Source: Octopus sinensis (Eukaryota). From it: DNA of 64,000 nt. Made by a program: the position numbers and the translations under genes. Position 1 is the first letter of the stretch. Each line of letters begins with the position of its first letter. The stretch is taken from assembly GCF_006345805.1 (NCBI RefSeq), contig NC_042997.1, positions 205,592,001 to 205,656,000 of the forward strand, read 5' to 3'. The notes below the pieces were generated by a model. That model ran no database searches, was not told the DNA's origin, and was given only the letters and a program-made list of their open reading frames with translations. This document shows, piece after piece, positions 1-48,679 of this stretch.

Positions 1-760
1 CATTGTTACGTCAGAACATGTAATTCCAACAACAGGCAAAGTATGGCACAATGTGAGGCCTTCAAATTTGGTCAATATAGCAAGCAGCATTTACTCCATT
101 TCCTCAGCCTTCACCAATGTTTCGGAAGACCACCAGTTCAGGTTTTTGGTTGAGTGCAATCTTGCCCCTTGCCATGATGCTCTGTCTTCCCTATGAGTAT
201 CTCTCCACCATACAGCCATTGGCATGACATTCACCCCTTCTCCTCTAAATGCCAGAAATGCCAGCTCTGCTGTCTTCCAGAGAAATGCAATATCAACTTT
301 TGTTAGACAAGACTACACTCTTCCACTACTCATGTTGCCCGCTCTGACGTTTTTGCAGCTCACTGCAGATGTACCCATCAATAATGATCTGTGCGGATGT
401 GGATCCTAGCTGGACTTTGGTGAGTCAAATTGAAAGATCTCAGCACAAATGGGTCTGTGGTGAGTTCCTATGCTCTGCCTAGCTGATTCCATTGTCCTAA
501 AGAATCAGTGCTGTCGGTGCTGATGACAGTCATGACGTGTTGTTGTAACCTTTGGTCGGCCACTGTGTGGATGATTATCCATGTTGTTTGTGGCACTATC
601 TCATTCCCTCAGCCATTCAGTTGTCCAAATACTGCAGTTCAAGTCATTAGCAATGACCTATGGACGTTGACCAGTATGGAGACATCCGATGGTTTGCTCC
701 CTCTGATTTCATGTCAGTCTTGTTATGCTTCCTACATTCGGGAAATGATGGACAGGCTGG
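1..760 (-). mobile_element. Decayed Tc1/mariner transposase in the last intron of PARP copy A
   Basis: Minus-strand translation gives Tc1-like fragments HSGRPKVTT, WKSVVLSNKS (cf. W..V.FSDES) and GCMVERYS..QSIM, with stops and frameshifts. Bases 1-140 are the reverse complement of ~35645-35785. Confidence 0.8.
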
Positions 761-1021
761 AGAATTTTGGTGCCTTTTATACCCAATGAGTCAATGTTTT
801 GACTCTGCATCATACTTTTCATAAAGATGGATTCGTTTTCATGAAAAGTGAGCGAATTTGAACCCTAAATGCAATCCTTGTGTTTTCAAAAGAGAGCAGT
901 GTTGTGGGTCAGTGACATCTTCCTGATGTCAAATTACCTTGAATTGTGATAAAATCTATATAATCTCAATATCATGAAACAAATAATCTTTTACTGTGTG
1001 ATGTGTTTATATATATATATA

Positions 1022-1760: not shown

Positions 1761-1876
1761 AAAACAAAGCAAGTTACTGTATGAGTTCAGACATTTAACA
1801 ATATATATATACATATATATATATATATATGCATACATACATATATATATATATGGTTTTTTTTTATTATTCTTAG

Positions 1877-2154
1877 GCACACGTGGTGAAGGTGTTTATT
1901 TTTCCAAAAAGATCCGATATTCTGCAGATGATAACTATTCTCCTCCTGACCATCACAAAATAAAGACAATATACAAATGCAGTGTTCTTGTGGGAAGAAT
2001 GACGCAAGGACGCCAGGGATTAAAGGTTTTACAGGATCCTTACAATTCTGCTGTTGATGATATTCAAAGACCCGATATTTATGTTACTTTTGATGACTCT
2101 CAAGCATATCCTAATTATTTGATTACATTCTCTAAGGCTTTAGTAACACTTTGA
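1877..2154 (+). CDS. PARP14/15-like ADP-ribosyltransferase, terminal catalytic exon (copy A)
   Basis: Follows the acceptor ttcttag and reads (G)TRGEGVYFSKKIRYSADDNYSPPD...VLVGR...YNSAVDDIQRPDIYVTFDDSQAYPNYLITFSKALVTL*. This is a typical PARP catalytic C-terminal half. Upstream exons lie left of the window. Confidence 0.9.
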
Positions 2155-2244
2155 GTTGAGATTTGTAATTCTAAAAGTATTCAAATGTTTAACACTAAAA
2201 CTTCAATTTTGTAACACTTAAAACTATTTGAATTTTTAAAACTA

Positions 2245-2570
2245 ATGCTGTTCAAATTTGCAACTGTAAAATTATTCAGATTTGTAACGTTAAAACTATT
2301 AAAACTTGTATCACTACCACTATTCAAATTTGTAACACTAAAATTATTCAAATTTGTCACAGTGAAACTATTCAAATTTGTAACAGTAAAATTATTCAAA
2401 TTTGTAACAGTGAAACTATTCAAATTTGTAACAGTAAAATTATTCAATTTTGTAACAGTGAAACTATTCAAATTTGTAACAGTAAAATTATTCAAATTTG
2501 TAACAGTGAAACTATTCAAATTTGTAACAGTAAAATTATTCAGATTTTTGACACTAAAACAATTGAATAT
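2245..2570 (+). repeat. 24-bp minisatellite (48-bp dimer) just 3' of the PARP copy A stop
   Basis: Alternating ttcaaatttgtaacagtaaaatta / ttcaaatttgtaacagtgaaacta, about 13 units. Confidence 0.95.
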
Positions 2571-3029
2571 ATTTTAACATTTTCTTTTTTGTTACATTAG
2601 ATGTAATTATTGCTTAAAATAAAATGAAGGCTGCAGGTTCAAATCCAGTCAAAGTTTATTATTTTGTATTATATTTTTTAAAAATAAGTATAAACCGGTT
2701 TTGTGACTGGGAAGAAACTGTCCACTGATTTTGGAAATGTGATTCTAAGAAGAATAAAATTCCTTTACACTTACCAAAACCCCATCCATATGATCAAGTA
2801 GAACCCAACTGGTACATATTGAATGCCTGTTATCAGAGAAAATTGGTGGAAAACCTGTGGAGTATTCATACTTAGCATTTTGGAGTGAAATCACCAGACG
2901 ATGGCCAACCTCCTGGTGGTATAATACGGGATATTATTGGGATACACGACACTGTTGCCGTTACTTTCACCATCTTTCTTGGAATTCTCAAGTAATATCA
3001 TGGAAAATGCAGGTTAATTCTCAAAGCAT

Positions 3030-6000
3030 GATCATCGGTTAACGTCCATTTTCCATGCTAGCATGGGTTGGACAATTTGACTAACGACTGGTGTACCAGA
3101 TGGCTGCACCAGGTTCCAATCTTGATCTGGCAGAATTTCTACAGCCGGATGCCCTTCCTAATGCCAACCACTCCAAGAGTATAGTGGGTGCTTTTTACGT
3201 ACCACCGGCATGAGAGCCAGTCAGGCGGTACTGGCAACAGCCACGCTCAAATGGTGTTTTTTACATGCCACCTGCACAGGAGTCAGTCCAGTGGTACTGG
3301 CAATGATCATGCTCGAATGGTGCTTTTTATGTGCCACCGGCATGGAAGCCAGTTAGCTACTCTGGCAATGATCATGTTCGGATGGTGCTCCACTAGCACG
3401 GATGCCAGTCATCGAATTTGATTTCGATTTCACTTGTCTCAACAAGGTCTTCGCAAGCAGAGTTTAGTGTCCAATGCAGGAAAGGTACGCATAAGCGGGC
3501 CGGTTACACCCCTGGCATAGGCCACAAGGTTATGGACTTATTTGGCTTGCCGGGTCTTCTCAAGCACAGCATATTTCCAAAAGTCTCAGTTGCTAGTCAT
3601 TGCCTAGGTGCGACCTAAAGTTCAAAGGTCGTGCTTCACCAGCTCATCCCAGGTCTTCCTGGGTCTACCTCTTCCACAGGTTCCCTCAACCACTAGGGTG
3701 TGGCACTTTTTCACAAAACTATCTTCATCCATTCTCGCCACATAACCATACCAGCGCAAACATCTCTCTTGTACACCACATCTGATGCTTCTTAGATCCA
3801 ACTTTGCTCTCAGGGTACTTACACTCAGTTGAGTATGCACACTGACATTACACATCCATCGGAGCATACTGGCTTCATTCCTTGCGAGCTTACACATGTC
3901 CTCAGCAGTCACGACTCCTGTTTCACTGCCATGTAGCCTGGCTGTTCGTACGCATGCATCATACAGTCTGCCTTTTACTCTAAGCGAGAGGCCCTTTGTC
4001 ACCAGCGGAGCTCTCTGAACTTTGCCCAAGCTATTCTTATTCTTGCAGCTACACTTTCAGCGCACCCTCCCCCACTACTGACTTGGTCACCTAGGTAATG
4101 GAAGCTATCAACTACTTCTAGTTTTTCTCCCTGGAATGTGGCGGAAGCTGTTCTCTGCACATTTTCAGTTTTTATTGCTCCTGAGCATCTGCCACATACA
4201 AAAACTATCTTCCCAGTTATCCTTCCTTTGATATTACTGCACTACTTATGTGTCCATAGCTTACAGTGGGTACATCTTATAGAGTTTCTACATACGCCTT
4301 TTCTACAGATCAAGCAGAGCAATCTACCTGAAGGGATTTGTGGTTTGTGAGCCTTCCTACTTATTAGGACTTTGGTTTTAGCTAGGTTGACTCTAAGGCC
4401 CTTTGATTCTAATCCTTGTTTATACAGGTGACTAGACTATAGCCGACACTGCCAGATATTTTACGCATCTCTGCAGTGATTCCTGATGGGTCTGGGGCTT
4501 TCGCTGTCTTCATACTCTTAATTGCTTTATCTACCTAGGTATAGCTGGTCCCTCTGTTGGGTCGACATTCGGCAGACCCTCTTTCTCCCATTCATTCTCT
4601 TTATTCATTCTCTTTATTCAGCAACCTTTCATAGTGGCGTTTCCAAACCTCTCTCTTTGCAGCTTCATTTAGTGCAAGAGAACCACCATTCATGCGAACA
4701 CATTTCTCTCCTACAACATCACGATTCTCTCTCACACACTGTCTTGCAACACAAAATACCTCAAGTCTTTGGTCCTCATGGCACAGAACATTGGCAAATT
4801 TTTTTCTTATCTGCTTCCCCTCTGGCTAAATAAACCTGTCTCCTAGTTTCCCTTCTGGCAGTCTGATACGATCCCCTGCTCCCACTATTCTTCCAGTCCT
4901 TCCAAGCCTGTTTCTTTTCCTTAATGGCCCTGTCTACAATATTGTTTCACCACCACGTTACCTTGGGTCAGAATGGGACTTTGTACCATCCACAGATCTG
5001 GTCAGTGGCCCTCAGCAGTTTGTCCCGTAGAAACCTCCAGTTGTCTTCTACGTGTGAAGCTACATCCCCTTCTATTTTATCAAAGGCTTTGAGTAATATG
5101 TCTCTAAATCTCTGTCCATTTGCATGATCTTTAAGCTTCCAGACCCTTCTCCTCCATACTGGTCTTCTGGGCATCCACTTAGCCCTGATCCTGAAGTCAT
5201 TAACTACCAGTCTATGTTGTGGGGTACATTCTTTGCCTGGGAAGATTTTGACATTTATAAGTAGCCATCTTACTTGTTTCCTGGTGAGGATATCAATTTG
5301 GCTAGTGTGTCTGCCAGAACAGTAGGTGACTAGGTGACTGGCAGGTTTTCTAAAGTTAGTATTGCAAACCATAAGATCATTTGCATCACAGAACTCCAGC
5401 AGCCTGGTTCCCTCCTCGTTGCAGGAGCCAAAACCGTAGCCTCCACGTATGCCATGGAAGCCTCCGGAATGATGTCCAACATGTCCATTGAAGTCACCAG
5501 CCACAAAGAGAAGGTCCCTGTCATTCGTCAACACGGTCTTTCTGTCCATCGGGTAGCCCTGGCTGAGGGGTAAAGGCCGAGATGATGGTTACTAACCCAT
5601 GATGAAGCATTAATCTAATCTTAAGTATTCTGTCGCATCCTCTGACTACCTCAGTTACCTTATCTAACCATTTTCCTGCAAAAAGTATACCCATGCCCCT
5701 GATCCCATCAGTGTTCCCTACCCAGAAAATCTTGTACCTGTGTTCTTTGCCTGTGAGGTACCTAGCAGAACCTCCTCTCCACCTTACTTCTTGGATGCAG
5801 CACATATCGACACATCTCCGTTCAAGCATCTCAGCAATCTCATCAGACCTACCTTTCAGTGTGCCAACATTGAGAGTGTCAATCCTGAGGGTGTGGGAGG
5901 TATGGGCCCTAGAGACCCTGGGACGGGGGACAGTAGCGTCATGTACCTGAAATAAGAGCTCGCATTTGGCAGAATTCATAAGCAAACAATAGCCTTGAGT

Positions 6001-6330
6001 TCAACCTGCATACACTACCCTTTCATATTTTTGCACTATATGGTCACTACCTTATATAGTAGGGGTGGGGATGGCGTAAAGCCTTTAAAAGTGTTCATGG
6101 GAGACAAACAAAGGATGGCAAAAAATAGGGACTTCTGGTACAGGTTGATGGGGTGGAAGGGTGGGTGCACTGCGAACTAGCAAACATGGATGAGAGCACC
6201 TCCTGCATACATATTCTTTCGGTGGAGGTATTGAAAATCGAGTAGGGGAATCCGAGTACGTGCGCTAGTTTATGTATGGTGGTGGAGGAAGTAGGAAGTC
6301 TTGGCGAGGCGAGTGGTACTTGAAAGAGAG
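3030..6330 (-). mobile_element. Near full-length decayed RTE-clade LINE (APE endonuclease + RT)
   Basis: APE motifs TLNVGTL, CCIQEVRW and AGDFNGHVG. RT C-terminus LRWYGYVARM...GRGRPRKTW. Tail at ~3030. The 5' UTR is homologous to 63450-63610. Broken by stops and frameshifts. Confidence 0.92.
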
Positions 6331-6999
6331 AGAGAGAGACACACACACACAGACAGAGTGAAGCCGAGAGACAGAGAGAGAGGGTGGGTAGAGATGTTCA
6401 GAACACGAGGGAGAAAAAATATTCTTTTGGGATTTGTGTGGCATAGTTAATTAAACAAGACAGCAAATGTTGATAATAGTAAAATAGAATTGAAGAATCT
6501 GAGAGCCAGTCTAAGACAAAATTAGAGAAATAAGTGACTGTGTGATAGACTTTCATAGATGAATGAATGAATACGTTGCGGTTAAAGAATTGCTTGAACT
6601 AAGGTTATCTTAAAGGCAAAAACAGGGAGGACGAAACTATTGAAACTATATTTACATGTCTACATGGTAATGAAATAGGCAGAATAATGAAAAGAACTAA
6701 CAAGGGGTTTATGATTTGTGCAGAAATAGAAGAGTAAGTGACGAGGTTGAACAGACAAAACTTCTTATCTGAGCATCTTCTGCAATTCGTATTTTTTCGC
6801 CGAGGTACTGAAATCAAGTAAACGTCATTTTGCAAATCCAGTACAGCTTCCATGTTGCAAATTACAATACATACATATACAAGCAAAAGGACCTGGTTTC
6901 ACTTGGGTTATAAACTTATAGCCTTAACACAGATTGATAGATAGATAGATAGATAGATAGGTAGATAGATAATGATTGATACAGCAGCATAACTACAGA

Positions 7000-28571: not shown

Positions 28572-30050
28572 TTACACATGGTTGAATATACAAGGAAAGA
28601 AATAAGACGAAAAACAGATTTGTTTTATGAGACTATGGTAAAAATATTTTAGAATATACAAAACAAAATTTTTCCCTTAATAAAACAACAGGTTTCGCTG
28701 TAGCTTTTCAAATTTTGAGTGTTAGGTGCAATACGAAAGAAGAAATTTTGTTTTTTATGTAACCAAGGTATTTTCAGCAAAGGGTAGGTAAATTTGTAAT
28801 TTTTATTTAGTTCTGGCTCATATTTTCTCGAAAAACGAGGCCTCTTTTTATTTAGTTGCAATTGTATAATTTTCAATATGGATTTATATTCAGTTCTCGC
28901 TTATATTTTTTTGTAAAATGATCCCTCTTTATTTAGTCACAATTGTGTTGAGGTCCAAATAGCCCATTGATATATTGGGAAGATTTAGAATTGTAGCTGC
29001 AGTTGTTCTGCACACATGTCAATGGGTTCGCGGAGATGTATCTGGCAATATTGTGGGGAAGAGATTTGTTGTTTGTGGACTGTACATCTACGTCTAAGAG
29101 ACATTCCTGTGGAACCTATATAGTTTTTTATGGCAGCTCAAGCATCCAATGACATAAATAAGGTTTTTGGAGGCGCAAGAGAAATTGGATTTAATTTTGA
29201 ATTTTTCCCTTGTTTAAAATGGAATTCTCATCCTTCCTAAAGATTGAGAGATGTTCTGCATTTTTTTACTCCTGTGTTTGTTGTTCTTGAGAATAATGTA
29301 TGATTTGTGAGGATTTTCTTTTATGTCTTTGATTGTTCATTGCTTTTAATGATCTTATGCATAATCGGAATTTCCTTCAGTTTGGAGCCCTTATGGAGTA
29401 TTGGGAGATTTTAAATGCTTCGTTGTTTCTGGGGTTGTGTATGGGTATATAGGTTAGTATTTTTAGAGTAGATGTGCGACTTTTCTTAATGTCTTTATGT
29501 CAATCAATTTTGCACATTTAATCGCATCACCTATGAGCTGAATTGGGTAATGTCTGTGCATGAGTACATTTTTAAGCTCTTGCAGTCTTAGTTCTTTGGT
29601 ATTTTTTCCATCACTATGGTGCAAATCTATCCTGCAGGGTTGAAGGTAATGTTTGTTTTAATATGTCTTGGGTGGCACAAGCTAAATAATAGGTATTGTT
29701 TAATGTCTGTATTTTTGTAAAATATGTCCCTTTCTATTTTTTATGTATTTTTTAAAACTAGTACGTCTAGGAATGGGAGTTCCTCTTGGTTGTTTTGCAG
29801 TGGGTTTGGAGGTCGGATACATTAAATACACTTGGAAAATCCCGTGGAAAAATAGTATTTCACACCGAGGTACAAATGGGTCTTATACAAAATATTTACT
29901 GCAAATTTTCCTGAAAACTTCAATTTATAAAAAAAATCTCTCTTCCCTTATAGATATTTCTTTTAGTAATTTATACGTTTAGTGTGCTAGAAGTAGTTAT
30001 TATCGTAAGACTTTATAGCATTCCATACAGCCATACCAACAAAACCACTT
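28572..30050 (-). mobile_element. Decayed Penelope-like element (duplicated at 42282-~43760)
   Basis: Minus strand reads ELPFLDVLV...IFYKNTD..QYL..HP, with a downstream GIY-YIG-like region. Confidence 0.8.
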
Positions 30051-30519
30051 CTTAATTATTTTTGTTGTAAATTATTCTGGTATATTAAAATTTTTTTTCA
30101 TGTTATCAAAAATACAGATCAAAGTTATATACCTACTTTGTGTAATACTATTAATTCATTCAATAAATAATTTTTTTACACTATGTACATCGGATAAAGT
30201 GGATTTTGCAACAATTTGAAAGGAATAAATATGAAATTACCATTAATGAAAACAGAGGCAACAGAGTGTATGAAACAGTTTCAAATGAAAACGGAAAATT
30301 TTGGCTGCAACGAATTGATAGTTTATTTAATCTACTCTGCTGTGAATGAAATTTAAATTTGTGAAGATCTCATAGTTCAAATACTGAATAAACTTCAGAA
30401 ACAAAAATTACAGGAAATTTCTTGGAACATGAATTTATAAAAAATTTCAAGATGTTCAAGCCTTTAATAATAGCTTTCTTACAGTGGCTATTACATACCT
30501 AATTAATAAGCAGTATTCT

Positions 30520-32410
30520 TCCTCCTAGCCCCTCTAAATTTCTCTTCACTTTCGACATCCAGAGCCTTTACACAGTGATCCCTCACCACGAGGGGCTGCG
30601 TGCACTCCAACATTTCCTTGACCTTCGACCTAACCCCAACCTGACATATCCACACTCGTTCGTCTGGCCGTACTTGTCCTCTCACTCAACTTCTCGTTTG
30701 CGGGTGATTTTTACCAGCATTTCTCAGGAGTGGCCATGGGAACGAGAACGGGTCCCAACTATGGCTACATTGAGGCCCAAATATTCTCAAGTTTCACTGG
30801 TCCCACTCCCGAACTATGCGGTCGGTATATTGACGACTGCATCGGTGCGACCTTACGCTCCTGCGAACATCTAGACTCCTTCCTCTCTTTTGCCAAATCT
30901 TTCCATCATGCCCTCCATACATCACTCCACTCTCATTACCTCCATGCACTACAAACACACAGATACACACTCATACCTCAACTTCTCCTCCTCCCACCCG
31001 AAACACACTAAGCTTTCCCTCCTCTATTCCCAATTTCTCCATCTACGCAGGCTTTGCAGTGACAACCATGAGACTCAGTGACAACCATGAGACTCAGTCT
31101 CAACTCATGGCTAACCACTTCATTCTACGTGGCTATCCCCTCACTACTATCCACACCGCCCTTGCCAGAGCACGTTCCGTGGACTGTGCATCTGCTCTTT
31201 CCCCCTGCACCCACCCCACCGTCTCCCGTTTCCCCTCACCTATCTCTTAAATGCAACATTCTCCAAGCCTTCCGCTAACTCCATTCTGACCCCTCTATTT
31301 CGCACATCTTCTCTAACTGACTCTTCCCCTCCTTCAAATGAGCCCACAACCTACAAGACCTCTTGGCCCACAGCTTCTTCCCTAACCCAAACTCCCAACC
31401 CGGCTCGTTCTCCTGCTCCGGCCCACGCTGCCACACTTGCCCTTACATCAACACCACCCTCCTTACCGGCACCCATCATTGACCCTATCATATCACTGAC
31501 TCTTTCACCTGCATTTCTAGCAACGTCATCTATTGCTTCTCCTGCTCTATCGGCCCTTCTCTGTACATCGGACAAATGGGACAACGCTTGGATGACCGGT
31601 TCGCAGAACACTTCTGACACACCTGACTCTGCAATGACACCTCGGTCTCGTGCCATTACTGCTCTACAGGTCACTCTTTGCAACACCTGTCTGTTTTCGG
31701 ATTGTCCATCCAGACTTCCGTCTTCTCCGTGAACAGAGATTAATCTCTTTTCGCTCCTTTGCACCACATGGAATCAACTCCTCTCCTCTTCATCTAACTC
31801 TCCTCTCTTCCTCTCACACCTATTTTCTCCCACCCACCTCTCTCTTTCTCTGACTCCTACTTCTCTTCCCTCCTAGCCACATTCTCGTTTCATCGTCACC
31901 CCTCCCTCGTAACCCCAACCTACCCAGTCCAACCCCACCTTCCCTATACATCCCATCCCACCCCTTACACCCACTTACATCCCACATACCCCACCCTCAG
32001 CCTAAACCACACATCACATTACACCACCACGCACACACTAGCACTGTCCACTTCCCAGTACCCTCACCATAATCAACACACCTACACATGCACACGTCAA
32101 GGTCACCAGGCCTCTTCCACACGCACATACATGCTCTCATATACACATTCGTGTGCACCTTCATTTTGGGATCACCACTACTTTATTATCTCCCCTTCTT
32201 CCTAGCTCTACTGTGTGACCCCTCTGTCTGGCATTCGCCATGATTGATCACTAGCCACTACACTTTATTTTCTCTCCCTGTTTCTTTTTGTGTTCCTTTC
32301 TGTGGAAGAGCGTAGGCTCAAAACATTAAAGACTTTCTCACTTTCTGAGAGTTAAACTAAGGCATCAGTTTGTCTATGCCACCTGTCTTCATCTTTTGTC
32401 TTTTTGTAAT
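30520..32410 (+). mobile_element. C/T-rich Penelope-like element (RT, GIY-YIG, pLTR; duplicated at ~44220-46120)
   Basis: FDIQSLYTVIPHHEGL, GVAMGTRTGPNY, GRYIDDCIG, YKHTDTHSYLNFSSSHP, and a C..CP...GIY-YIG-type region. Confidence 0.88.
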
Positions 32411-32419
32411 TCCCCCCCA

Positions 32420-32460
<41 letters not shown>

Positions 32461-32560
32461 TCAAAATGAGGGTGAAAAAATTGTATATTAATTTAATAAC
32501 ACCAATTTAACACCAGTGGTTTAGCGCATAAAAAACTGAGATTCAGTAAATATTATCAAC

Positions 32561-32826
32561 ACACATATGAGAGTGAATCCACTAAAGTGGACGTCCTTAC
32601 GCTAACCACTAAAAATTGTTCTCAAGAAAAACTTACCACACTATGAATGTAAGCGAGCAGGACAAATGAAAACTAACAAAAATATAGATTTATATAGATC
32701 TATATTTTTGTTATTTTTCATTTGTCCTGCTCACTTACGTTCATAGTGTGCTAAGTTTTTCTTGAGAACAATTTTTAGTGGTTAGCGTAAGGGCGTCCAC
32801 TTTAGTGGATTCCCTCTCATATGTGT
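32561..32826. repeat. Near-perfect 266-bp palindrome (duplicated at 46300-46565)
   Basis: acacatatgagag...ctctcatatgtgt. The ~130-bp arms meet at atatagatttatatagatctatat. Confidence 0.93.
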
Positions 32827-32834
32827 ATTAATAT

Positions 32835-33060
32835 ATCATCATCATCATCATCATCATCATCATCGTTTAACGTCTGTTCTCCATGCTAGCATGGGTTGAA
32901 CGGTTCGACCGGGGATCTGGGAAGCCAGAAGGCTGCACCAGGCTCCAGTCTTATCTGGCAATGTTTCTACAGCTGGATGCCCTTCCTAACGCCAACCACT
33001 CCGTGAGTGTAGTGGGTGCTTTTTACGTGCCACCTGCACAGGTGCCAGGCGAGGCTGGTA
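32835..33060 (-). mobile_element. RTE LINE 3' tail (duplicated at ~46575-46795)
   Basis: (CAT)n followed by the shared tail. Confidence 0.85.
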
Positions 33061-33171
33061 TGTATATATATTATGAATATATAAAATATTAGGGAAAAAC
33101 AAGTATTCCAGGTTATCAGGACATTTACTATTTCACACTTTTCTTATGAAATGTAAAAAGTATATTTTATA

Positions 33172-33516
33172 ATATTATTATTATAAATTTGGGATCTTTA
33201 CCAATACATATGCACCTCCTGTTTCAGGATAACCTCATGGTATGGTATATGCAGAGAAAGATAAAGCAATTAAAATTATTAAAGCAATTAATGTAACTTA
33301 CAAGAAAATTAGTTAAATAAATATAACTTAACTGTTATTATTCCCCACAGAATTATAACAAGTAGTTATATTTATTTAATTTTCTTATAAGTTACATTAA
33401 TTGCTTTAATAATTATATTTGCTGTATCTTTCTCTGCGTATACCATATCATGAGGTTATCCTGAAACAGGAGGTGCATATCTATTGGTAAAGATCCCAAA
33501 TTTGTAATAATAATAT
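33172..33516. repeat. Hairpin/MITE with ~165-bp arms (duplicated at ~46908-47252)
   Basis: aaatttgggatctttaccaat...gcacctcctgtttcaggataacctcatg vs catgaggttatcctgaaacaggaggtgc...attggtaaagatcccaaattt. Confidence 0.92.
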
Positions 33517-34129
33517 ACGTATTTTAAATATTTCATAGGGAATACTTATTGTATTGTAAGCTCTATTTAGCACAGCAATCATTTCAGCTTACATATGTAC
33601 TGCTCCTGAGAGGGTGGGGATATGTGTGTGTATTGTACTTTGCAACATGGAAGCTGTACTTCATTTGCAAAATGATGCTTTGAGAATTAACCTGCATTTT
33701 CCATGATATTACTTGAGAATTCCAAGAAAGATGGTGAAAGTAATGACAAAAGTGTCGTGTATCCCAATAATATCCCGTATTATACCACCAGGACGTTGGC
33801 CATTGTCTGGTGATTTCACTCAAAAATGCTAAATATGAATACTCCACAGGTTTTCCACCAATTTTCTCTGATAACAGGCATTCAATATGTACCAGTTGGG
33901 CTCTACTTGATCATATGGATGGGGTTTTGGTAAGTGTAAAGGAATTTTATTCTTCTTGGAAACACATTTCCAAAATCAGTGGACAGTTTCTTCCCAGTCA
34001 CAAAACCGGTTTATACTTTTTTTTAAAAAATATAATACAAAATAATAAACTTTGACTGGATTTGAACCTGCAGCCTTCATTTTATTTTAAGCAATAATTA
34101 CATCTAATGTAACAAAAAAGAAAATGTTA

Positions 34130-34570
34130 AAATATATTCAATTGTTTTAGTGTAAAAAATCTGAATAATTTTACTGTTACAAATTTGAATAGTTTCACTG
34201 TTACAAATTTGAATAATCTTAGTGTTACAAATTTGAATAGTTTCACTGTTACAAAATTGAATAATTTTAGTGTTACAAATTTGAATAGTTTCACTGTTAC
34301 AAATTTGAATAATTTTACTGTTACAAATTTGAATAGTTTCACTGTTACAAAATTGAATAATTTTACTGTTACAAATTTGAATAGTTTCACTGTTACAAAT
34401 TTGAATAATTTTACTGTTACAAATTTGAATAGTTTCACTGTTACAAATTTGAATAATTTTACTGTTAAATATTTGAATAGTTTAACTGTGACAAATCTGA
34501 ATAATTTTCCTGTTACAAATCTGAATAATTTTACAGTTACAAATTTGAACAGCATTAGTTTTAAAAATTC
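34130..34570 (-). repeat. 24-bp minisatellite 3' of the PARP copy B stop
   Basis: Same unit as 2245-2570 in reverse orientation, about 17 units. Confidence 0.95.
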
Positions 34571-34645
34571 AAATAGTTTTAAGTGTTATAAAATTGAAGT
34601 TTTAGTGTTAAACATTTGAATACTTTTAGAATTACAAATCTCAAC

Positions 34646-34923
34646 TCAAAGTGTTACTAAAGCCTTAGAGAATGTAATCAAATAATTAGGATATGCTTGA
34701 GAGTCATCAAAAGTAACATAAATATCGGGTCTTTGAATATCATCAACAGCAGAATTGTAAGAACCATGTAAAACTTTTAATCTACGTTGCCCTTGAATCA
34801 CTCTTCCCACAAGAACACTGCATTTGTATATTGTCTTTATTTTGTGATGGTCAGGAGTAGAATAGGTATCATCTGCAGAATATCGGATGCTTTTGGCAAA
34901 ATAAACACCTTCACCATATGTGC
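34646..34923 (-). CDS. PARP14/15-like catalytic domain, copy B terminal exon
   Basis: (G)TYGEGVYFAKSIRYSADDTYS...VLVGR...YNSAVDDIQRPDIYVTFDDSQAYPNYLITFSKALVTL*, with acceptor ttcttag. Confidence 0.93.
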
Positions 34924-34943
34924 CTAAGAATGATAAAAACAAA

Positions 34944-34979
<36 letters not shown>

Positions 34980-34984
<5 letters not shown>

Positions 34985-35630
34985 ACCTTTGAACATTGAG
35001 GCTCACTGAAGCAATGACTAGTGACCAGGACCTTTGGAGATATACTGTGATTCAGAAGACCAAACAAGCCAAGTGAGACCACAGCCCATGGCCTATGCCA
35101 GTGGGTGTAAGCAGCCCACTTATGAATACCCCCTCCCCACTCGTTCATTGGACAATAAACTTTGCTTGCAAAGACCTGTTGAGGCAAGTGAAATCAAAAT
35201 CGCTGACGTGGCCGATGACACTACTGCGTGATTGGCACTTGTACCAGTGGAAAATTAAAAGCACACCGAGCATGATCGTTGCCAGGGCCATATAGTGGCT
35301 CCTCTGCTGGTGGCACGTGAAAAACAACATTTGAGCATGGTCGTTGCCAGTGCCACCGGACTACCTCCAATGAAGGTAGCATGTAAAAATACCTTTGAGC
35401 ATGGTTGTTGTCAGAACCGCCTGACTGGCCCTCGTGCCAGTGGCATGTAAAAGCACCCACTAAACACTCGGAGTGGTTAGCATTAGGAAGGGCATCCAGC
35501 TATAGAAACTTTTCCACAACAGAGTGAGCCTGATGCAGCCTCTTGTTCATTAGTCCTCAGTCAGACCGTCCAACCCATGCTAGCTTGGAAAGTGGATGTT
35601 AAACGATGATGATGATGATGATGATGATGA
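34980..35630 (+). mobile_element. RTE LINE 3' fragment in the PARP intron (duplicated at ~48722-49372)
   Basis: RT C-terminal remnant plus 3' UTR and (GAT)n tail. Confidence 0.8.
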
Positions 35631-35644
35631 TATATATATATATG

Positions 35645-36069
35645 CTGAACTGGTGGCCTTCCAAAACTTTGGTGAAGGCTGAGGAAATGGAGTAACTGCT
35701 GCTTGCTATATTGACCAAATTTGGAGACCTCACATTGTGCCATACTTTGCCTGTTGTTGGAATTACATGTTCTGACATAACAATGCCCGTGACCATACTG
35801 CCAGGTTGACAACAGGCTTCCTCCAACAACATCAACATCTAGACACTGGCTTCAGTCCAGACCCAAACCCTATAGAGCACCTGTGGGATGAAACCCCTAA
35901 GAAGGCTAAATGACACCCGTCCAAGACCGAAAACTCAGGACAACTCACTGCAAGTTTTAACAGAGTGTCAGCTGCTATCCCCATGGCTTTCATCAATCGT
36001 TTGGTGCATTCAATGTGCAGAAGATGCCTGGCAGTAATCAACAATAATAGTGGTCACACGAGATATTGA
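35645..36069 (+). mobile_element. Tc1 transposase 3' half (duplicated at ~49387-49812)
   Basis: SPDPNPIEHLWDE...FINRLVHSMCRRCLAVINNNSGHTRY*, a Tc1 C-terminal signature. Confidence 0.88.
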
Positions 36070-36923
36070 GCTTATCTCTTTGAATCCAGGACATTTTGTC
36101 ATCACATGACACCATGTGACATCAAACAGGTTTCAGGAAATGATGTTTTATCATTGGGAGAGCCTGTCCCTTGCAAATATTTACCACTGAACTTGTTTGG
36201 GTGGCATTTTGTGAAACCCCACTCTTCTACTCACCCCATATCCATATTCACCATACACATCAAAATCTAATTCCAAAAGATGATAAAAGAGTTAGTGAGA
36301 GAAGATCATTTGAGATATCTAAATGGAGTGACCTCTGCTGGTTTATCAGATTTCTGTACAGTTATTAAATGTCCCTTAACCAATTTCTAGGCCGTAGCAG
36401 ACATTGAATATTTCAATGAGAGTTAACAACACTGTATTGATTATCTCAGTATATCTATAATTGACAAACTCAGAATGGTGATTGCTTGGCCTGGTGTTCG
36501 CTTGTTGATATTTCTGTCTAGTCCTGCAGACTCTCCACTAAACTTTTTCCTTCTTCCTATAACATTATCCCTCTGAAATTCCACCCCTTCTCTTATCTTT
36601 CCTGCAATATTTTCATTTACAAAGGTTCAAGAGGAACATTAATGGATGGGGACAGACCCTTCCTCCCAATCCAAATAAAAGTGTTGGTTCCACAATAATA
36701 AAATACACCTGGTTTACTCTAGAGCAGAAGATGTTAGGAAGGGGACCTGGCAGTAGAAACGATGCCAAACATGGAATGTGTGAGCAATATGACAGCCTCT
36801 GTCCTCTCTGAGTGAGAAAGGATTCTAAACAGCAATCAATGTGGAGAGTGACTGTCCAGCTCAGGACAATAGGAAGGGTGGGTAGAGGAGACTACTATTG
36901 CCACTTTGAGAATATGTACTTAC

Positions 36924-37101
36924 CATTTTTACTACAATATCTACAGTTGAATCCATATCTATTTATTCTCTCAACACATTCTGCAGTAGTACCATGCCAA
37001 AGGCCATCAACTTCATTTGTAATCTTTGGATTTTCTGCCTCAAATTGTTCTTTCAATGCTTTGTATCTCTGGCATAATGTTTTATTTTGAATTCTCTCAA
37101 T
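36924..37101 (-). CDS. PARP catalytic domain, copy B middle exon (contains HGT)
   Basis: ttctacag|IERIQNKTLCQRYKALKEQFEAENPKITNEVDGLWHGTTAECVERINRYGFNCRYCSKN-G|gtaagt. 178 nt, phase-compatible with both neighbouring exons. Confidence 0.93.
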
Positions 37102-37491
37102 CTGTAGAAAGGAAAATACATTTATGAAAAGACAATCAGTTCACTTCTTTGACAAGGAAATAACGTTTGTGGTGAAAATCCCCAACCCTATCTGCTTTTT
37201 TTTTTTTCTTTTTTATTTGATACCAATTTTGATTCGGCTGTAAATTTTGGTAAGGCATAATAGTTTAGCTGCAAAATGGTGTTGCATTTACAATTCAATG
37301 CAAGAAGTTAAAGCAGAGGTATTTTTGTTGAGCAAAGATTTCTTGTGAATATCCAAAAACACATAAAACCATCCCAAAATAGGTTCATACAATGAGATTT
37401 AAGTCTTTTATACAAACAAAATGTCTCTTAACATTTTGTTTTAACAATAAACCATCAAATATTGTTTATAAACAGAAGTAAAAATACAAAC

Positions 37492-37625
37492 TTTGATTAT
37501 ACGATAGGAAGGCAAATTCCGACGGAAAGTGGCCTGGATGTCATCATATTCTGATCCACTTGTGACTGGAACAATTTTAATTAATTCCTTGTCTCCCATT
37601 GATGACCATCTATCAAAGACTGATT
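37492..37625 (-). CDS. PARP catalytic domain, copy B first exon
   Basis: ctttag|(E)SVFDRWSSMGDKELIKIVPVTSGSEYDDIQATFRRNLPSYRIIK|gtttgt. 134 nt, matching the W..M...V...SEY...F..I.K pattern that precedes IERIQN in PARP14-like proteins. Confidence 0.9.
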
Positions 37626-37962
37626 CTAAAGTTCAAACAGAAATCAAATATTTCAGAACAAAAATAAAATTATGAACCCTTTTTCTGTTAAAAGTTTATA
37701 AAAAACAGGAATATTTTGGCAAACTTTGGGGAATAAACAAGGGACACTGAATTACTAATGATTACTATAGTTTAGTAGTAGTAGTAGGAGTGCAGGTGGG
37801 GTTGGGCTGTGGGTGTGGTGAAGAACTCCTTCCAAAGCAGACATTAGAGCACAACACAGTCCTTGCACCGATATCAAACCATCCAACCCATTGCTGGCAT
37901 GGAAAATAGATGTTAAAAGATTATGATGATGATGGCCTCAGATATGTATATATATATGTGTG

Positions 37963-37994
<32 letters not shown>

Positions 37995-38163
37995 TGTATG
38001 CATATAACTAAATGTATGTGAATTTTTTCAATGTGTACAAATAACATGGAAAAAATATATATTTACCAGGGTAGCAAAAATTCACATAAGTACCAAGAAT
38101 GTTACATCCTATTTTTAAAGGTAGAAGTCCCAGGGTTTAGTGAAATGTTTTTGAATGACATAG

Positions 38164-38497
38164 ATAAATTCAGAAATGGAGTTAAATTCAGGTGTTATTC
38201 AAATATTTATACTTCTGACACATGTTTCGAAGAAAACATTGATATTATTCCTTAGGAAATAAAATGATGTAAAACAATGTAATCATCTTGCATTCCCCTT
38301 CATCATATATGCAGTTATCACATTCGGTTAAAATGGCTTATTGATGTGTTTTGTTTCTATTTTCTCCCATGATGTGATGATTACATTGTTTGACATCATT
38401 TTATTCCCTCAGAAATAGTACCAATGTTTCCTTCGAAACATGTCAGAAGTAAAAAGATTTGAATAACACCTGCGCTTAACTCCATTTCTTAATTTAT
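38164..38497. repeat. MITE-like element with ~125-bp inverted arms (duplicated at 51901-52234)
   Basis: 38164-38287 is the approximate reverse complement of 38376-38497. Confidence 0.85.
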
Positions 38498-38508
38498 ATA
38501 CATGCATG

Positions 38509-38544
<36 letters not shown>

Positions 38545-38779
38545 TATATGTATGTATGTATATGCATATATTGTTTGAAGTGATGTACAGTTTTATGTAT
38601 TTAGAAAAAGCTGGTAGTCGGTATTTTGGATATGGCTAAAAATTTCCATACTATCTTTGAAATAATCTTTGTAATTTCGTAAACTAATTATTTAAATTGA
38701 ACCTTCATTATAACTTCTGAAAGCCTTAGTTTTTCTCCTGAAAAGCAAAATAAGCTGTTTTCATCCAATGCAAAAACAT

Positions 38780-39740
38780 TCTACTGAGAAATAGGGAAAA
38801 CCATTCCAGACTCCACTCCCATGGAAGAAGTTGGAACTTTTAGAAAAATATCTGGAGTGATGCATGGAAATAAAGACTGGGTTAGACATACAGAAGGATC
38901 CTACCAAAACTTACCAGAACAAGCATGGTAAGACATCACAATAGCAAAGCTGAGGATAGTGCTCACAAAGGTTCATATGTGGAAATCCCCTGGTAATGAC
39001 AGGGTGCCAAATTTCTGGCTCGCATCACTCCCATGTGCACATGAAAATTAAGTTCAGGCATTGAATGAAATTATGAGTGATCCTATGAAAATACCGATTG
39101 GTTATTCAAGAAGAATAAGAAAGCCAAATTTCCCCAAAACTATTGGCTCATAACATGTCTCTCTAACACATATAAAATTTCAACATCCATCCTTGTGGAG
39201 AACGCATACAAATTAAGGAAACAAAACAATATTTTCCCCCACTGAACAAAAATGGGGGCTGATGAGGCTCATATGGATGCAAAGATGAACTCTTAATCAA
39301 TCACATGATCCTTGAGAACTGTCATAACAAACCCAGAAATCTCAGTGCTGCATGAATTGATTACACAGTGGTCTTTGACAGCATACAGCATTCATGGATC
39401 TTGAAATTGCTTCTTAATTTCTTCTGTGATTTCAAATTTTCTGAAGCACAATATTCAGTGTGAAATACAAATCTCCAATTATACAACTCTGATGGAGTAC
39501 TGACCACAAAAAATTATTAATATCAACTGTGGAATTTTCCAAGGCGACTCACTTTCACCTTCAATTTTCTGCATAGCCCTAATACCCCTTACAAATGAAT
39601 TCAACAGAATAGGGTATGGATATAAGATTGGTGACAAGAAAACAAGTCATCTATTTTATGTGGATGACTTAAAACTCTATGGCAAAGACGATAATGAGCT
39701 TGAAGGACTGCTACATAATGTGAAAGCATTTAGTGATGAC
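38780..39740 (+). mobile_element. R4/Dong-like RLE non-LTR retrotransposon, RT 5' part (duplicated at ~52515-53475)
   Basis: WKSPGNDRVPNFWL, SYGCKDELLINHMIL, GIFQGDSLSP, SHLFYVDDLKLY, VKAFSDD. Contains stops and frameshifts. Confidence 0.85.
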
Positions 39741-46118: not shown

Positions 46119-46199
<81 letters not shown>

Positions 46200-48300: not shown

Positions 48301-48381
48301 AAATTCAAATAGTTTTAAGTGTTATAAAATTGAAGTTTTAGTGTTAAACATTTGAATACTTTTAGAATTACAAATCTCAAC

Positions 48382-48659: not shown

Positions 48660-48679
48660 CTAAGAATGATAAAAACAAA

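What the first reader, a model, noticed from the sequence alone, without database searches (positions are those of the whole stretch)
1877..2154. Diversifying-selection-like signature in the catalytic exon of duplicated PARP mono-ADP-ribosyltransferases
Seen: copy A's last exon differs from copy B at 15 codons, of which 13 change the amino acid (R/Y, S/A, K/S, N/T, P/T, M/V, T/I, R/Q, Q/R, G/R, Q/H, D/G, P/S) and 2 are silent. Five of the changed codons differ at two bases. All differences fall in the first ~55 codons; the last 37 codons plus the stop are identical. The changes flank GxGxYF and cluster in the segment GRMTQGRQGLKVLQDP vs GRVIQGQRRLKVLHGS. Established: several mammalian mono-ART PARPs (e.g. 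macro-PARPs PARP9/14/15) are antiviral and evolve under recurrent positive selection. Inference: this is a lineage-specific, probably cephalopod, PARP expansion whose paralogs are changing substrate specificity in a host-pathogen conflict. This is the best candidate for an undescribed system in the window.
Basis: partly seen in the sequence, partly recalled or inferred. Interest (0 to 1): 0.78.

Follow-up and report, generated by a model that had tools for sequence, protein, structure and literature searches.

The report
Octopus PARP14-like exon: gene-conversion mosaic
The counted differences are real, but their sharp 5'/3' split comes from gene conversion between neighbouring octopus PARP14/15-like gene copies; only the wider gene family, not this one pair, gives statistical evidence for fast, probably adaptive, change around the enzyme's active-site loops.

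Summary
Copy A (1877-2154, +) differs from copy B (34646-34923, -) at 20 bases in 15 codons: 13 replacement, 2 silent, 5 double hits, all in codons 1-55. There is a third copy, C (48382-48659, -), in a 13.7-kb tandem duplicate of B. The window is Octopus sinensis chromosome CM016859.1. The exon is the last of three encoding a PARP14/15-type mono-ADP-ribosyltransferase domain.

The A/B pair alone shows no dN/dS above 1 (1.33 whole exon, 1.35 in the variable tract, Fisher p = 1). The "identical last 37 codons" are not purifying selection. The low divergence (about 2%) runs about 1 kb into the 3'UTR and beyond, with a breakpoint after base 2038 (24/184 versus 13/688 differences, permutation p <= 2e-4). 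This is a gene-conversion tract, most likely copied from B/C into A. For five of the 13 replacement differences, both codons occur elsewhere in the family.

Across 13 octopus paralogs, however, the exon has omega 1.4. M2a versus M1a gives LRT 38, above all 140 null simulations that include heavy recombination. Hypervariable codons sit in the D-loop, the beta6-beta7 hairpin and the acceptor loop. This is a new member of a known kind: rapidly evolving, duplicated macro-PARPs.

The parts
1877..2154 (+). Copy A, last (third) exon of a PARP14/15-like ART domain: 92 codons plus stop. Carries the GEGVYF motif (triad Tyr) and DIYV (third triad position, Ile).
   Evidence: Translation and recount; Pfam PARP 32.5 bits against a cut-off of 26.7; acceptor ttcttAG|GC as in B and C.
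1855..2038 (+). High-divergence tract of A versus B/C: 22 nt of polypyrimidine tract plus exon codons 1-54. 24/184 differences (13%).
   Evidence: Alignment A1 and segment counts; maximum chi-square breakpoint after 2038.
2039..3026 (+). Low-divergence tract shared with B/C: rest of the exon, the 3'UTR with its minisatellite, and downstream DNA. Differences: 0/113, 2/125 and 11/447. Inferred gene-conversion tract with B/C as donor.
   Evidence: Donor direction from collinearity of B's flank with the O. vulgaris V2 flank down to window 28544.
3027..6824 (.). SINE plus LINE insertion that interrupts A's copy of the shared 3' flank.
   Evidence: Homology to B stops at 3026 and resumes at 6825; endonuclease/RT-like ORFs.
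6825..6879 (+). Last about 55 nt of A/B shared flank (matches B 33675-33621); end of the inverted homology block.
1..1017 (+). Intron upstream of A's last exon. Bases 1-141 match B's intron (35785-35645, 7/141 differences). Bases 1-1017 match the corresponding intron of both O. vulgaris copies (about 95%). A's two upstream ART exons are therefore expected just left of the window.
   Evidence: No LWHGT-type exon on the + strand in 1-1876.
34646..34923 (-). Copy B, last exon (exon Z).
   Evidence: 100% identical to the annotated O. sinensis protein P0007, 'PARP15-like', 187 aa.
36924..37101 (-). Copy B, exon Y (IERIQN...LWHGT...CSKN), carrying the triad His and the start of the D-loop.
37492..37625 (-). 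Copy B, exon X, the N-terminal part of the ART domain. The annotated start ATG lies at 37599-37597.
48382..48659 (-). Copy C, last exon; differs from B at G45 (silent) and L89S.
50661..50838 (-). Copy C, exon Y; its 59 codons are identical to B's.
51229..51362 (-). Copy C, exon X; three replacement differences from B (S/N, S/P, R/H) inside a local patch of raised B/C divergence.
28572..55763 (.). Two units of a 13.7-kb direct tandem duplication (28572-42031 and 42282-55763, 99% identical) carrying B and C. The junction is a 77-bp x3 repeat at 41998-42236.
   Evidence: Single copy in the O. vulgaris locus.
2161..2564 (+). 24/48-bp minisatellite in the 3'UTR of A. The same array lies in B (34145-34639) and C (47881-48375). 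A is 96 bp shorter.

Best explanation
A, B and C are the 3' ends of members of an Octopus-specific cluster of PARP14/15-like mono-ADP-ribosyltransferase genes. A (+) and B/C (-) face each other as a convergent, inverted pair, and the same arrangement exists in O. vulgaris.

(1) A recent interlocus gene-conversion tract of about 1.1 kb overwrote A from inside the last exon (after base 2038) through the stop codon, the 3'UTR and downstream DNA. B/C was most likely the donor. This is why codons 56-92 are identical; purifying selection is not needed to explain it.

(2) The unconverted codons 1-55 keep ordinary between-paralog divergence for this family. That divergence is a mixture. Some are states that recur in other paralogs (inherited or imported by earlier short conversions). 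Others are lineage-private replacements, 6 in A and about 5 in B/C.

These replacements fall on codons that are hypervariable across the whole family. They line the NAD+/acceptor cleft: the end of the D-loop, the helix after the triad Tyr, the residue before the second pocket Tyr, the beta6-beta7 hairpin and loop, and the residue next to the third triad position.

At family level these codons evolve with omega of about 4-5. This fits diversification of what the ART domains bind or modify, with gene conversion shuffling the variants.

Shown: the anatomy, the breakpoint, the reticulation and the family-level statistics. Inferred: donor direction, adaptive cause, any immune role, and whether A is functional.
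For: Anatomy and identity:
- Three ART exons are present for B and C.
- B is 100% identical to O. sinensis P0007 on CM016859.1.
- PDB best hits are human PARP14 (E = 5.5e-34) and PARP15. The AF2 model has pLDDT 92.5 and TM 0.83-0.92 to PARP15/14 ART domains.

Gene conversion:
- Divergence of A versus B by segment: intron 1-141, 7/141; proximal intron, 4/22; exon 5' part, 20/165; exon 3' part, 0/113; UTR, 2/125; downstream, 11/447.
- Maximum chi-square breakpoint after base 2038, p <= 2e-4.
- In O. vulgaris the convergent pair V1/V2 is 93.7% identical over exons X-Y but 97-97.7% over the distal intron, the last exon and the flank. Homogenisation of the facing 3' ends is therefore recurrent.
- B's 3' flank is collinear with V2's flank down to window 28544, whereas A's shared flank stops at 6879.
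- B versus C shows a second patch: 37 of 101 mismatches fall in 36500-37560.

Reticulation:
- At codons 20, 23, 42, 48 and 55 both alleles recur elsewhere in the family with identical codons.
- A shares the unique CCT at codons 23 and 55 with V1/V2, and the unique GGC (codon 1) and ACA (codon 31) with B/C.

Family-level selection:
- Pairwise omega is mostly 1-3 in the last exon.
- With 13 sequences: M0 omega 1.38; M2a-M1a LRT 37.9; M8-M7 38.4; M8-M8a 38.0; 31% of sites at omega of about 4.6.
- Whole domain, 9 sequences: LRT 44.
- None of 140 null replicates with extreme block reshuffling reached 37.7; the maximum was 31.8.
- Tree-free minimum changes: 82 replacement versus 21 silent, with 9 codons showing at least 4 amino-acid states.
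- Exon divergence exceeds intron X-Y divergence 2-9 fold in most paralog pairs.

Structural mapping: secondary structure of the model together with the PARP15 description of the D-loop and the beta7-beta8 acceptor loop (PMC12572374).
Against: - The codon-model fits are my own implementation, with NJ trees and few replicates. Recombination, clearly present here, inflates such tests: 44-56% of the first 32 recombinant null replicates exceeded the chi-square threshold.
- Global omega is not significantly above 1 (M0 versus omega = 1: 2*dlnL of about 2).
- The sequences were sampled through annotated proteins, which biases towards intact ORFs.
- An alternative placement of the conversion boundary, upstream of the exon, cannot be excluded on silent sites alone. 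Two clean silent differences in 36.8 sites do not differ significantly from the flank.
- A's orthology to V1 is not shown by the intron: informative sites are A=V1 11 and A=V2 10.
- A's upstream exons lie outside the window, and neither A nor C appears among annotated proteins.
- At least one family member (P0021) has lost the triad Tyr, so relaxed constraint contributes somewhere in the family.
Confidence: 0.65

Rival explanations
1. A and B are recent duplicates. After duplication, positive selection drove a burst of replacements in codons 1-55 (the acceptor-side loops), while purifying selection kept codons 56-92 identical.
For: Replacement divergence in codons 1-55 (16.5/128 = 12.9%) is four times the flanking non-coding divergence (25/768 = 3.3%; Fisher p = 5e-5). 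The two unambiguous silent differences (5.4%) are compatible with the flank. Both lineages carry private replacements: 6 in A and about 5 in B/C. The same codons are hypervariable across the family.
Against: - The identical stretch continues for about 1 kb of non-coding DNA, so selection on codons 56-92 is not what keeps it identical.
- The 22 nt of intron next to the exon are also highly diverged, at 4/22.
- Intron 1-141 is already 5% diverged, as much as between species.
- At five of the 13 sites both alleles recur elsewhere with identical codons, which is unlikely for new mutations.
- dN/dS inside the tract is 1.35, Fisher p = 1.
Confidence: 0.12
2. Copy A is a non-functional partial duplicate (pseudo-exon) drifting neutrally. 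Its differences from B are unconstrained decay, patched at the 3' end by gene conversion.
For: - dN/dS of about 1.3 is indistinguishable from 1.
- A has Arg at a position that is Tyr/Phe in 23 of 26 homologs, and Ser at a position that is Ala in 24 of 26.
- No annotated protein contains A's exon.
- A 3.8-kb TE sits in its 3' flank.
- A family member with a broken catalytic motif exists (P0021).
Against: - The reading frame, the acceptor site and the polypyrimidine tract are intact.
- B/C, which is annotated and has intact catalytic motifs, carries about as many private replacements as A.
- The positionally equivalent O. vulgaris copy V1 is annotated as a 265-aa protein.
- With only about 20 substitutions, the absence of a stop codon is not informative either way.
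Confidence: 0.2
3. The mosaic is an assembly artefact: a chimeric join or collapsed haplotypes in a repeat-rich region created a false A/B identity block and the B/C tandem duplicate.
For: B and C are 99% identical over 13.7 kb, and the tandem copy is absent from the O. vulgaris locus. The region is full of SINE/LINE copies and microsatellites.
Against: - A and B are inverted, 32 kb apart, and still differ at 13 positions plus a 96-bp minisatellite indel within the shared block. It is therefore not a duplicated read pile-up.
- An independent assembly of O. vulgaris shows the same kind of 3'-end homogenisation between its convergent copies.
- B versus C has a structured patch of divergence rather than uniform error.
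Confidence: 0.04

Closest known systems
Human PARP14 / PARP15 (macro-PARPs, ARTD8/ARTD7) catalytic domain
   Same: - Best sequence and fold matches: E = 5.5e-34, about 40% identity, TM 0.83-0.92.
- H-Y-hydrophobic triad: LWHGT, GVYF, DIYV.
- Octopus paralogs and the O. vulgaris ortholog of B carry Macro and RRM_PARP14 domains upstream.
- Vertebrate PARP14/15 are also repeatedly duplicated and evolve fast (PMC4038475, PMC13224862).
   Different: - The loop after the beta6-beta7 hairpin is 8 residues shorter than in PARP14.
- No macro, RRM or WWE exons were found inside this window.
- In primates the strongest signal reported is in the macrodomains (PMC4038475). Here it was tested, and found, only in the ART domain.
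Clustered PARP14-like paralogs in invertebrates (amphioxus, sponges; Perina et al. 2014 as cited in PMC13224862)
   Same: Lineage-specific tandem or clustered PARP14-like duplications. The octopus copies lie at 205.6, 206.2, 206.7, 211.1, 211.4 and 211.5 Mb of one chromosome.
   Different: In the searched library I found no paper that describes the octopus/cephalopod cluster, its gene conversion or its ART-domain hypervariability.
Multigene families with interlocus gene conversion plus diversifying selection (MHC class I/II, primate TRIM/APOBEC3-type arrays; from general knowledge)
   Same: Mosaic divergence with sharp breakpoints, alleles shared across paralogs, exons more diverged than neighbouring introns, and omega above 1 at a subset of codons.
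   Different: No link to pathogen recognition has been shown here. The variable sites lie in an enzyme's active-site loops rather than a binding groove. Copy number and polymorphism are unknown.
ZAP/PARP13 PARP-like domain under positive selection (Kerns et al. 2008, cited in PMC4038475)
   Same: Positively selected sites lie within the PARP catalytic fold rather than in the nucleic-acid or ADP-ribose binding modules.
   Different: PARP13 is catalytically inactive. B and C keep the H-Y-I triad and NAD+-pocket residues, so they are plausibly active. The match to ZAP is much weaker (E of about 1e-14).

Membership tests
PARP/ARTD catalytic domain (Pfam PF00644), PARP14/15-like mono-ART subgroup | Significant match to the PARP catalytic-domain profile | tested here: met
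   B's three-exon domain scores 71 bits against a cut-off of 26.7. A's exon alone scores 32.5 bits and B's exon alone 33.7 bits.
PARP/ARTD catalytic domain (Pfam PF00644), PARP14/15-like mono-ART subgroup | H-Y-[I/L/Y] triad typical of mono-ARTs (His in HG[ST], Tyr in GxGxYF, hydrophobic residue in place of PARP1 Glu988) | tested here: met
   B and C have LWHGT (exon Y), GEGVYF and DIYV. For A only the Tyr and Ile can be read; its His-bearing exon lies outside the window.
PARP/ARTD catalytic domain (Pfam PF00644), PARP14/15-like mono-ART subgroup | ART fold superimposable on solved PARP14/15 domains | tested here: met
   AF2 model of B: pLDDT 92.5, pTM 0.88. Foldseek top 50 hits are all PARP15/PARP14 ART domains, TM 0.81-0.92.
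[quoted passage not shown] | Macro (PF01661) and/or RRM_PARP14 exons upstream in the same gene | tested here: inconclusive
   None was detected on the minus-strand frames of 37400-42281 or 55700-64000. The O. vulgaris ortholog of B is part of a 1096-aa RRM+Macro+PARP gene that runs beyond the fetched locus. Paralogs P0017, P0019, P0020 and P0021 are Macro+PARP. The exons may lie beyond base 64000.
[quoted passage not shown] | Mono-ADP-ribosyltransferase activity | not testable with these tools
   Needs a recombinant-protein automodification or NAD+ consumption assay.
Genes under recurrent positive (diversifying) selection | dN/dS significantly above 1 between the two copies named in the finding | tested here: not met
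   Omega is 1.33 for the whole exon and 1.35 for codons 1-55, Fisher p = 1.0.
   With 13 sequences: M2a-M1a 37.9, M8-M7 38.4, M8-M8a 38.0. These come from my own GY94/F3x4 code with an NJ tree.
Genes under recurrent positive (diversifying) selection | Signal survives recombination / gene conversion | tested here: inconclusive
   None of 140 block-reshuffled null replicates reached the observed LRT; the maximum was 31.8. The tree-free count gives 82 replacement and 21 silent changes. But the null LRTs are strongly inflated, replicates are few, and no recombination-aware estimator was available.
Genes under recurrent positive (diversifying) selection | Functional link to pathogens (induction, restriction, antagonism) | not testable with these tools
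   The only hint is that a PARP14-like protein was detected in the O. vulgaris skin-mucus proteome (PMC11431876). Its identity relative to these copies is unknown.
Interlocus (ectopic) gene conversion between paralogs | Statistically supported breakpoint between high- and low-divergence segments | tested here: met
   Maximum chi-square 42.6, breakpoint after base 2038, permutation p <= 2e-4.
Interlocus (ectopic) gene conversion between paralogs | The low-divergence segment includes non-coding DNA, so it is not explained by protein constraint | tested here: met
   3'UTR 2/125; downstream 11/447; about 5/55 beyond the TE insertion.
Interlocus (ectopic) gene conversion between paralogs | Incongruence with the sister species (paralogs within a species more alike than orthologs, in the tract only) | tested here: met
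   Exon 3' part: A-B 0, A-V1 5, A-V2 3 differences. Exon 5' part: A-B 20, A-V1 18, A-V2 19. A/B/C share the ...SKALVTL* end, against ...SN* in V1/V2. B's exon Y is V2-like (6 versus 23 differences).

The most novel reading that the evidence does not exclude
The octopus PARP14/15-like cluster could be a diversified effector repertoire. In this reading, a dozen or more ART domains differ mainly at hypervariable D-loop, beta6-beta7 and acceptor-loop residues that set which proteins or nucleic acids get ADP-ribosylated, or that escape pathogen-encoded inhibitors. Interlocus gene conversion would act as the shuffling mechanism. This would be an innate-immune 'variable-region' logic built on an enzyme active site, in an animal without adaptive immunity.
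Probability: 0.15. Interest if true: 0.75.

Novelty: new member of a known kind. Interest (0 to 1): 0.4.

Why it matters
Macro-PARPs are among the fastest-evolving antiviral genes in vertebrates, but which part of the protein is in conflict, and with what, is still debated. An independent invertebrate expansion would give a natural panel of variants for asking what sets target choice in mono-ARTs. This holds if, as here, the hypervariable codons lie in the ART domain's D-loop and acceptor loop.

It is also a caution for genome scans. A striking replacement:silent count between two paralogs, with a sharp boundary, is what gene conversion in a fast-evolving family produces. It should not be read as pairwise positive selection.

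Tried and rejected
- The protein search with the 92-aa exon alone returned only six metagenomic fragments at 43-47% identity and no octopus protein. Repeating it with the 195-aa domain and then with an alignment was needed.
Stop-free segments joined with X were used instead. They found no macro, WWE or RRM exons in the window.
- I looked for A's exons X and Y. No HG[ST]-type exon lies on the + strand in 1-1876. No annotated protein contains A's exon. The tools cannot fetch the chromosome left of the window, so A's integrity stays untested.
- I first read A's intron as closer to O. vulgaris V1 (95%) than to V2 (91.6%) from BLAST identities. A three-way alignment showed this came from gaps: informative sites are 11 versus 10. 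That orthology argument was dropped.
- I considered RNA-editing or deaminase footprints for the clustered changes. This was rejected: by eye from the alignment, the changes are about 12 transitions and 8 transversions of mixed types.
- I considered purifying selection as the cause of the identical 3' codons. This was rejected because the non-coding flank is equally similar.
- The first simulation run timed out. It was rerun single-threaded per worker.
Full report
WHAT IS THERE

The window is AT-rich, repeat-rich animal DNA. The exon at 1877-2154 (+) follows an acceptor ttcttAG at 1875-1876 and opens in phase 1. It reads (G)TRGEGVYFSKKIRYSADDNYSPPDHHKIKTIYKCSVLVGRMTQGRQGLKVLQDPYNSAVDDIQRPDIYVTFDDSQAYPNYLITFSKALVTL*.

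A pattern search found not one but two further copies, both on the minus strand: B at 34646-34923 and C at 48382-48659. B and C lie in the two units of a 13.7-kb direct tandem duplication (28572-42031 and 42282-55763, about 99% identical).

- A and B differ at 20 nt in 15 codons.
- Thirteen are replacements and 2 are silent.
- Five codons carry two changes, always at adjacent bases.
- All differences lie in codons 1-55.
- C differs from B only at G45 (silent) and L89S.

GENE AND FAMILY

Upstream of B and C there are two more coding exons:
- Exon X (B: 37625-37492) encodes ...DRWSSMGDKELIKIVPVTSGSEYDDIQATFRRNLPSYRIIK.
- Exon Y (B: 37101-36924) encodes IERIQNK...VDGLWHGT...GFNCRYCSKN.
Both have canonical splice sites.

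The three exons together give a 195-aa PARP catalytic domain:
- Pfam PF00644 scores 71 bits.
- The best solved relatives are human PARP14 (E = 5.5e-34), then PARP15, PARP10 and PARP12.
- An AlphaFold2 model built on a 26-sequence alignment has pLDDT 92.5. It superimposes on PARP15/PARP14 ART domains with TM 0.83-0.92.
- The triad is H-Y-I, typical of mono-ARTs.

The protein search with the whole domain identified the source. B is 100% identical to Octopus sinensis 'PARP15-like' P0007 (187 aa, starting at an internal ATG) on chromosome CM016859.1. The coordinates returned imply that the window is 205,592,001-205,656,000.

Further paralogs lie on the same chromosome at 206.2, 206.7, 211.1, 211.4 and 211.5 Mb. 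Homologs occur in O. vulgaris, O. bimaculoides, Argonauta and a cuttlefish. Several carry Macro and RRM_PARP14 domains upstream. Inside the window I found no macro, WWE or RRM exon.

THE MOSAIC

Aligning A with B and C beyond the exon changes the picture. A-versus-B divergence by segment is:

| Segment | Differences |
|---|---|
| Intron piece 1-141 | 7/141 |
| 22 nt before the exon | 4/22 |
| Exon codons 1-55 | 20/165 |
| Rest of the exon | 0/113 |
| 3'UTR before the minisatellite | 2/125 |
| Downstream of the minisatellite | 11/447 |

- A 3.8-kb SINE+LINE insertion (3027-6824) interrupts the flank. Homology then resumes for about 55 nt and ends at 6879.
- A maximum chi-square scan puts one breakpoint after base 2038, with 24/184 versus 13/688 differences, permutation p <= 2e-4.
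- The identity of the last 37 codons is therefore part of a block about 1.1 kb long that is mostly non-coding. Protein-level constraint is not its cause.

COMPARISON WITH O. VULGARIS

The fetched locus L005 contains the same convergent pair:
- V1 (+) is the annotated 265-aa protein P0008.
- V2 (-) is the 3' end of a 1096-aa RRM+Macro+PARP gene.
- V2 is the ortholog of B/C. Exon Y differs at 6/177 nt from B but V1 differs at 23/177. Across the X-to-intron region the informative sites are B=V2 66 versus B=V1 33. The 3' flank is collinear with window 34646 down to 28544.
- V1 and V2 are themselves 93.7% identical over the X-Y region but 97-97.7% identical over the distal intron, the last exon and about 400 nt of flank. 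The facing 3' ends of the pair have therefore been homogenised independently in that species as well.

In the last exon the two halves tell different stories:
- 3' part: A-B 0, A-V1 5, A-V2 3 differences.
- 5' part: A-B 20, A-V1 18, A-V2 19, B-V1 21, B-V2 22. B differs from distant paralogs by 21-27 there, which is nearly a star.
- A, B and C share the derived ending ...FSKALVTL*, where V1 and V2 end ...FSN*.

B's flank continues to match V2's well beyond the point where A's shared flank stops. I therefore infer that B/C was the donor and A the recipient.

The tandem B/C duplicate is absent from the O. vulgaris locus. C keeps the ancestral upstream linkage, and B is the extra downstream copy. 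B versus C shows a further local patch of divergence: 37 of 101 mismatches fall in 36500-37560, including three replacements in exon X, while exon Y is untouched.

WHAT THE 13 REPLACEMENTS ARE

Using all 13 copies for polarity:
- A-private codons: 3 (CGT, R), 10 (TCC, S), 12 (AAG, K), 43 (ACG, T), 46 (CGC, R), 47 (CAG, Q), and the silent AAG at 50.
- B/C-private codons: 12 (AGC), 43 (ATT), 47 (CGT), 53 (CAT), 54 (GGT), and the silent GGG at 45 in B only.
- At codons 20, 23, 42, 48 and 55, both alleles occur elsewhere in the family with identical codons. At codon 46, B's CAA occurs in five distant paralogs.
- A shares the unique CCT at 23 and 55 with V1/V2, and the unique GGC (codon 1) and ACA (codon 31) with B/C.

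The tract is thus reticulate. It mixes retained or imported paralog states with lineage-private replacements on both sides.

Two of A's private changes hit conserved positions. R3 lies where 23 of 26 homologs have Tyr/Phe. S10 lies where 24 of 26 have Ala. The other sites are variable everywhere.

SELECTION, PAIR LEVEL

Nei-Gojobori counting gives 3.5 silent differences over 56.2 sites and 16.5 replacement differences over 201.8 sites, omega 1.33. Within codons 1-55, pS is 0.095 and pN 0.129, Fisher p = 1.0.

Three of the five double-hit codons can include a silent step, so '13 versus 2' overstates the contrast. Both pN (p = 5e-5) and pS (p = 0.04) in the tract exceed the flanking non-coding divergence of 25/768. 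This fits a tract with an older or imported history better than a purely replacement-driven burst. With only two unambiguous silent differences, however, the burst model is not excluded.

SELECTION, FAMILY LEVEL

I assembled codon alignments of exons X, Y and Z from 12-13 copies. I fitted GY94/F3x4 site models with my own code.

| Data set | M0 omega | M2a-M1a LRT | Other tests |
|---|---|---|---|
| Last exon, 13 sequences | 1.38 | 37.9 | M8-M7 38.4; M8-M8a 38.0; 31% of sites at omega about 4.6 |
| Whole domain, 9 sequences | 1.20 | 44.0 | - |
| Exon X alone | 1.39 | 4.5 (not significant) | - |
| Exon Y alone | 1.08 | 4.9 (not significant) | - |

Because conversion is rife, I simulated null data under two schemes, M1a and all-neutral. 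Blocks of 29 or 10 codons were reshuffled among taxa.
- The LRT is indeed inflated: 44-56% of the first 32 recombinant replicates exceed 5.99.
- None of the 140 recombinant replicates reached 37.7; the maximum was 31.8.
- Mean M0 omega was about 0.5 under the M1a null (maximum 0.99) and about 1.0 under the all-neutral null (maximum 1.52), so the observed 1.38 is exceptional only against the M1a null.

Other family-level evidence:
- A tree-free count gives at least 82 replacement and 21 silent changes. Nine codons show four or more amino-acid states.
- In most paralog pairs the exons are 2-9 times more diverged than the 390-bp intron between X and Y. Examples are P0010/P0017 (3/389 versus 28/561) and V2/P0013 (5/387 versus 64/558).
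- Exon pS also exceeds that intron, so part of this contrast reflects intron homogenisation or constraint.

My reading is that site-specific positive selection in the family is likely (about 0.6) but not proven.

WHERE THE VARIABLE CODONS SIT

Exon codon k corresponds to P0007 residue 95+k. From the model's secondary structure and the PARP15 description of the D-loop and acceptor loop (PMC12572374), sites with posterior above 0.9 map as follows:

| Exon codon(s) | Location |
|---|---|
| 3 | End of the D-loop |
| 10 | Last residue of the triad-Tyr strand (VYFA) |
| 12, 14 | Loop after that strand (12) and the short helix 108-112 (14) |
| 20 | Residue before the conserved Tyr116 |
| 27, 29, 34 | Loop 113-123 (27) and the following long strand 124-133 (29, 34) |
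| 42, 44, 46, 47 | beta6-beta7 hairpin and its loop |
| 67 | Residue immediately before Ile163, the counterpart of PARP1 Glu988 and PARP15 Leu659 in the acceptor loop |

I could not compute distances to NAD+, because model coordinates are not exposed.

COMPARISON WITH WHAT IS KNOWN

Rapid evolution and repeated duplication of PARP14/15 in vertebrates is established. So are positively selected sites in the PARP13 catalytic domain, and clustered PARP14-like paralogs in amphioxus and sponges (PMC4038475; PMC13224862).

I found no paper on a cephalopod PARP14-like cluster. One O. vulgaris skin-mucus proteome lists a PARP14-like protein (PMC11431876).

The finding is therefore a new member of a known kind. 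It has one useful twist, ART-domain hypervariability combined with gene conversion, and one correction: the pairwise pattern is a conversion boundary.

VERDICT

- Observation: confirmed.
- Interpretation: partly supported.
- Interest: moderate, 0.4.

The main open points are whether A is a live gene, the exact history of codons 1-55, and whether the family-level signal survives recombination-aware analysis on a full paralog census.

Noticed in passing
window 28572-42031 and 42282-55763; junction 41998-42236: A 13.7-kb direct tandem duplication (about 99% identical) carries copies B and C, joined by a 77-bp x3 tandem repeat. The O. vulgaris locus has a single copy, so the duplication is either specific to O. 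sinensis or an assembly artefact.
   Followed up: partly
window 36500-37560 versus 50237-51297: B and C differ at about 0.3% overall, but 37 of their 101 mismatches fall here. The patch covers the introns on both sides of exon Y and three replacement changes in exon X; exon Y itself is untouched. It looks like a second conversion patch, or a pair of patches, from another paralog.
   Followed up: partly
window 2161-2564, 34145-34639, 47881-48375: A 24/48-bp minisatellite begins about 10 nt after the stop codon in all three copies. A has two fewer 48-bp units. The array is also present downstream of V2 in O. vulgaris.
   Followed up: no
window 3027-6824: A 3.8-kb SINE plus LINE insertion (endonuclease/RT-like ORFs on the minus strand, about 4968-5985) splits A's copy of the shared 3' flank. 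The insertion therefore post-dates, or is tolerated within, the converted tract.
   Followed up: partly
intron between exons X and Y (B: 37102-37491) and its counterparts in loci L002-L010: This 390-bp intron is only 0.8-2.8% diverged between paralogs whose flanking exons differ by 5-12%. Exon silent sites are also more diverged than the intron. The cause is unexplained: it could be intron homogenisation or constraint, or exon variants that are older than the intron.
   Followed up: partly
protein P0021 (O. vulgaris paralog; not in the window): This family member reads FDEGVSF where the others read FGEGVYF. It has lost the triad tyrosine and part of the GxG motif, so it is probably a catalytically dead or decaying copy.
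   Followed up: no
window 2137-2154 (and the B and C equivalents) versus L005 21040-21050: O. sinensis A, B and C share a six-residue C-terminal extension (...FSKALVTL*). The two O. vulgaris copies end ...FSN*.
   Followed up: no
window 1800-1855, 34925-34980, 48661-48722: A (TA)n microsatellite lies about 20 nt upstream of the splice acceptor, separated from it by the polypyrimidine tract, in all three copies. SINE sequence lies next to it in B and C; in A the nearest SINE (1001-1226) is about 570 nt upstream. A/B homology is lost upstream of this point: B lacks about 870 nt of intron that A shares with both O. vulgaris copies.
   Followed up: partly
annotation of CM016859.1 around the window: Only B is represented among annotated proteins, as 187 aa from an internal ATG. 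Neither C (99% identical exons) nor A appears in the protein collection.
   Followed up: partly
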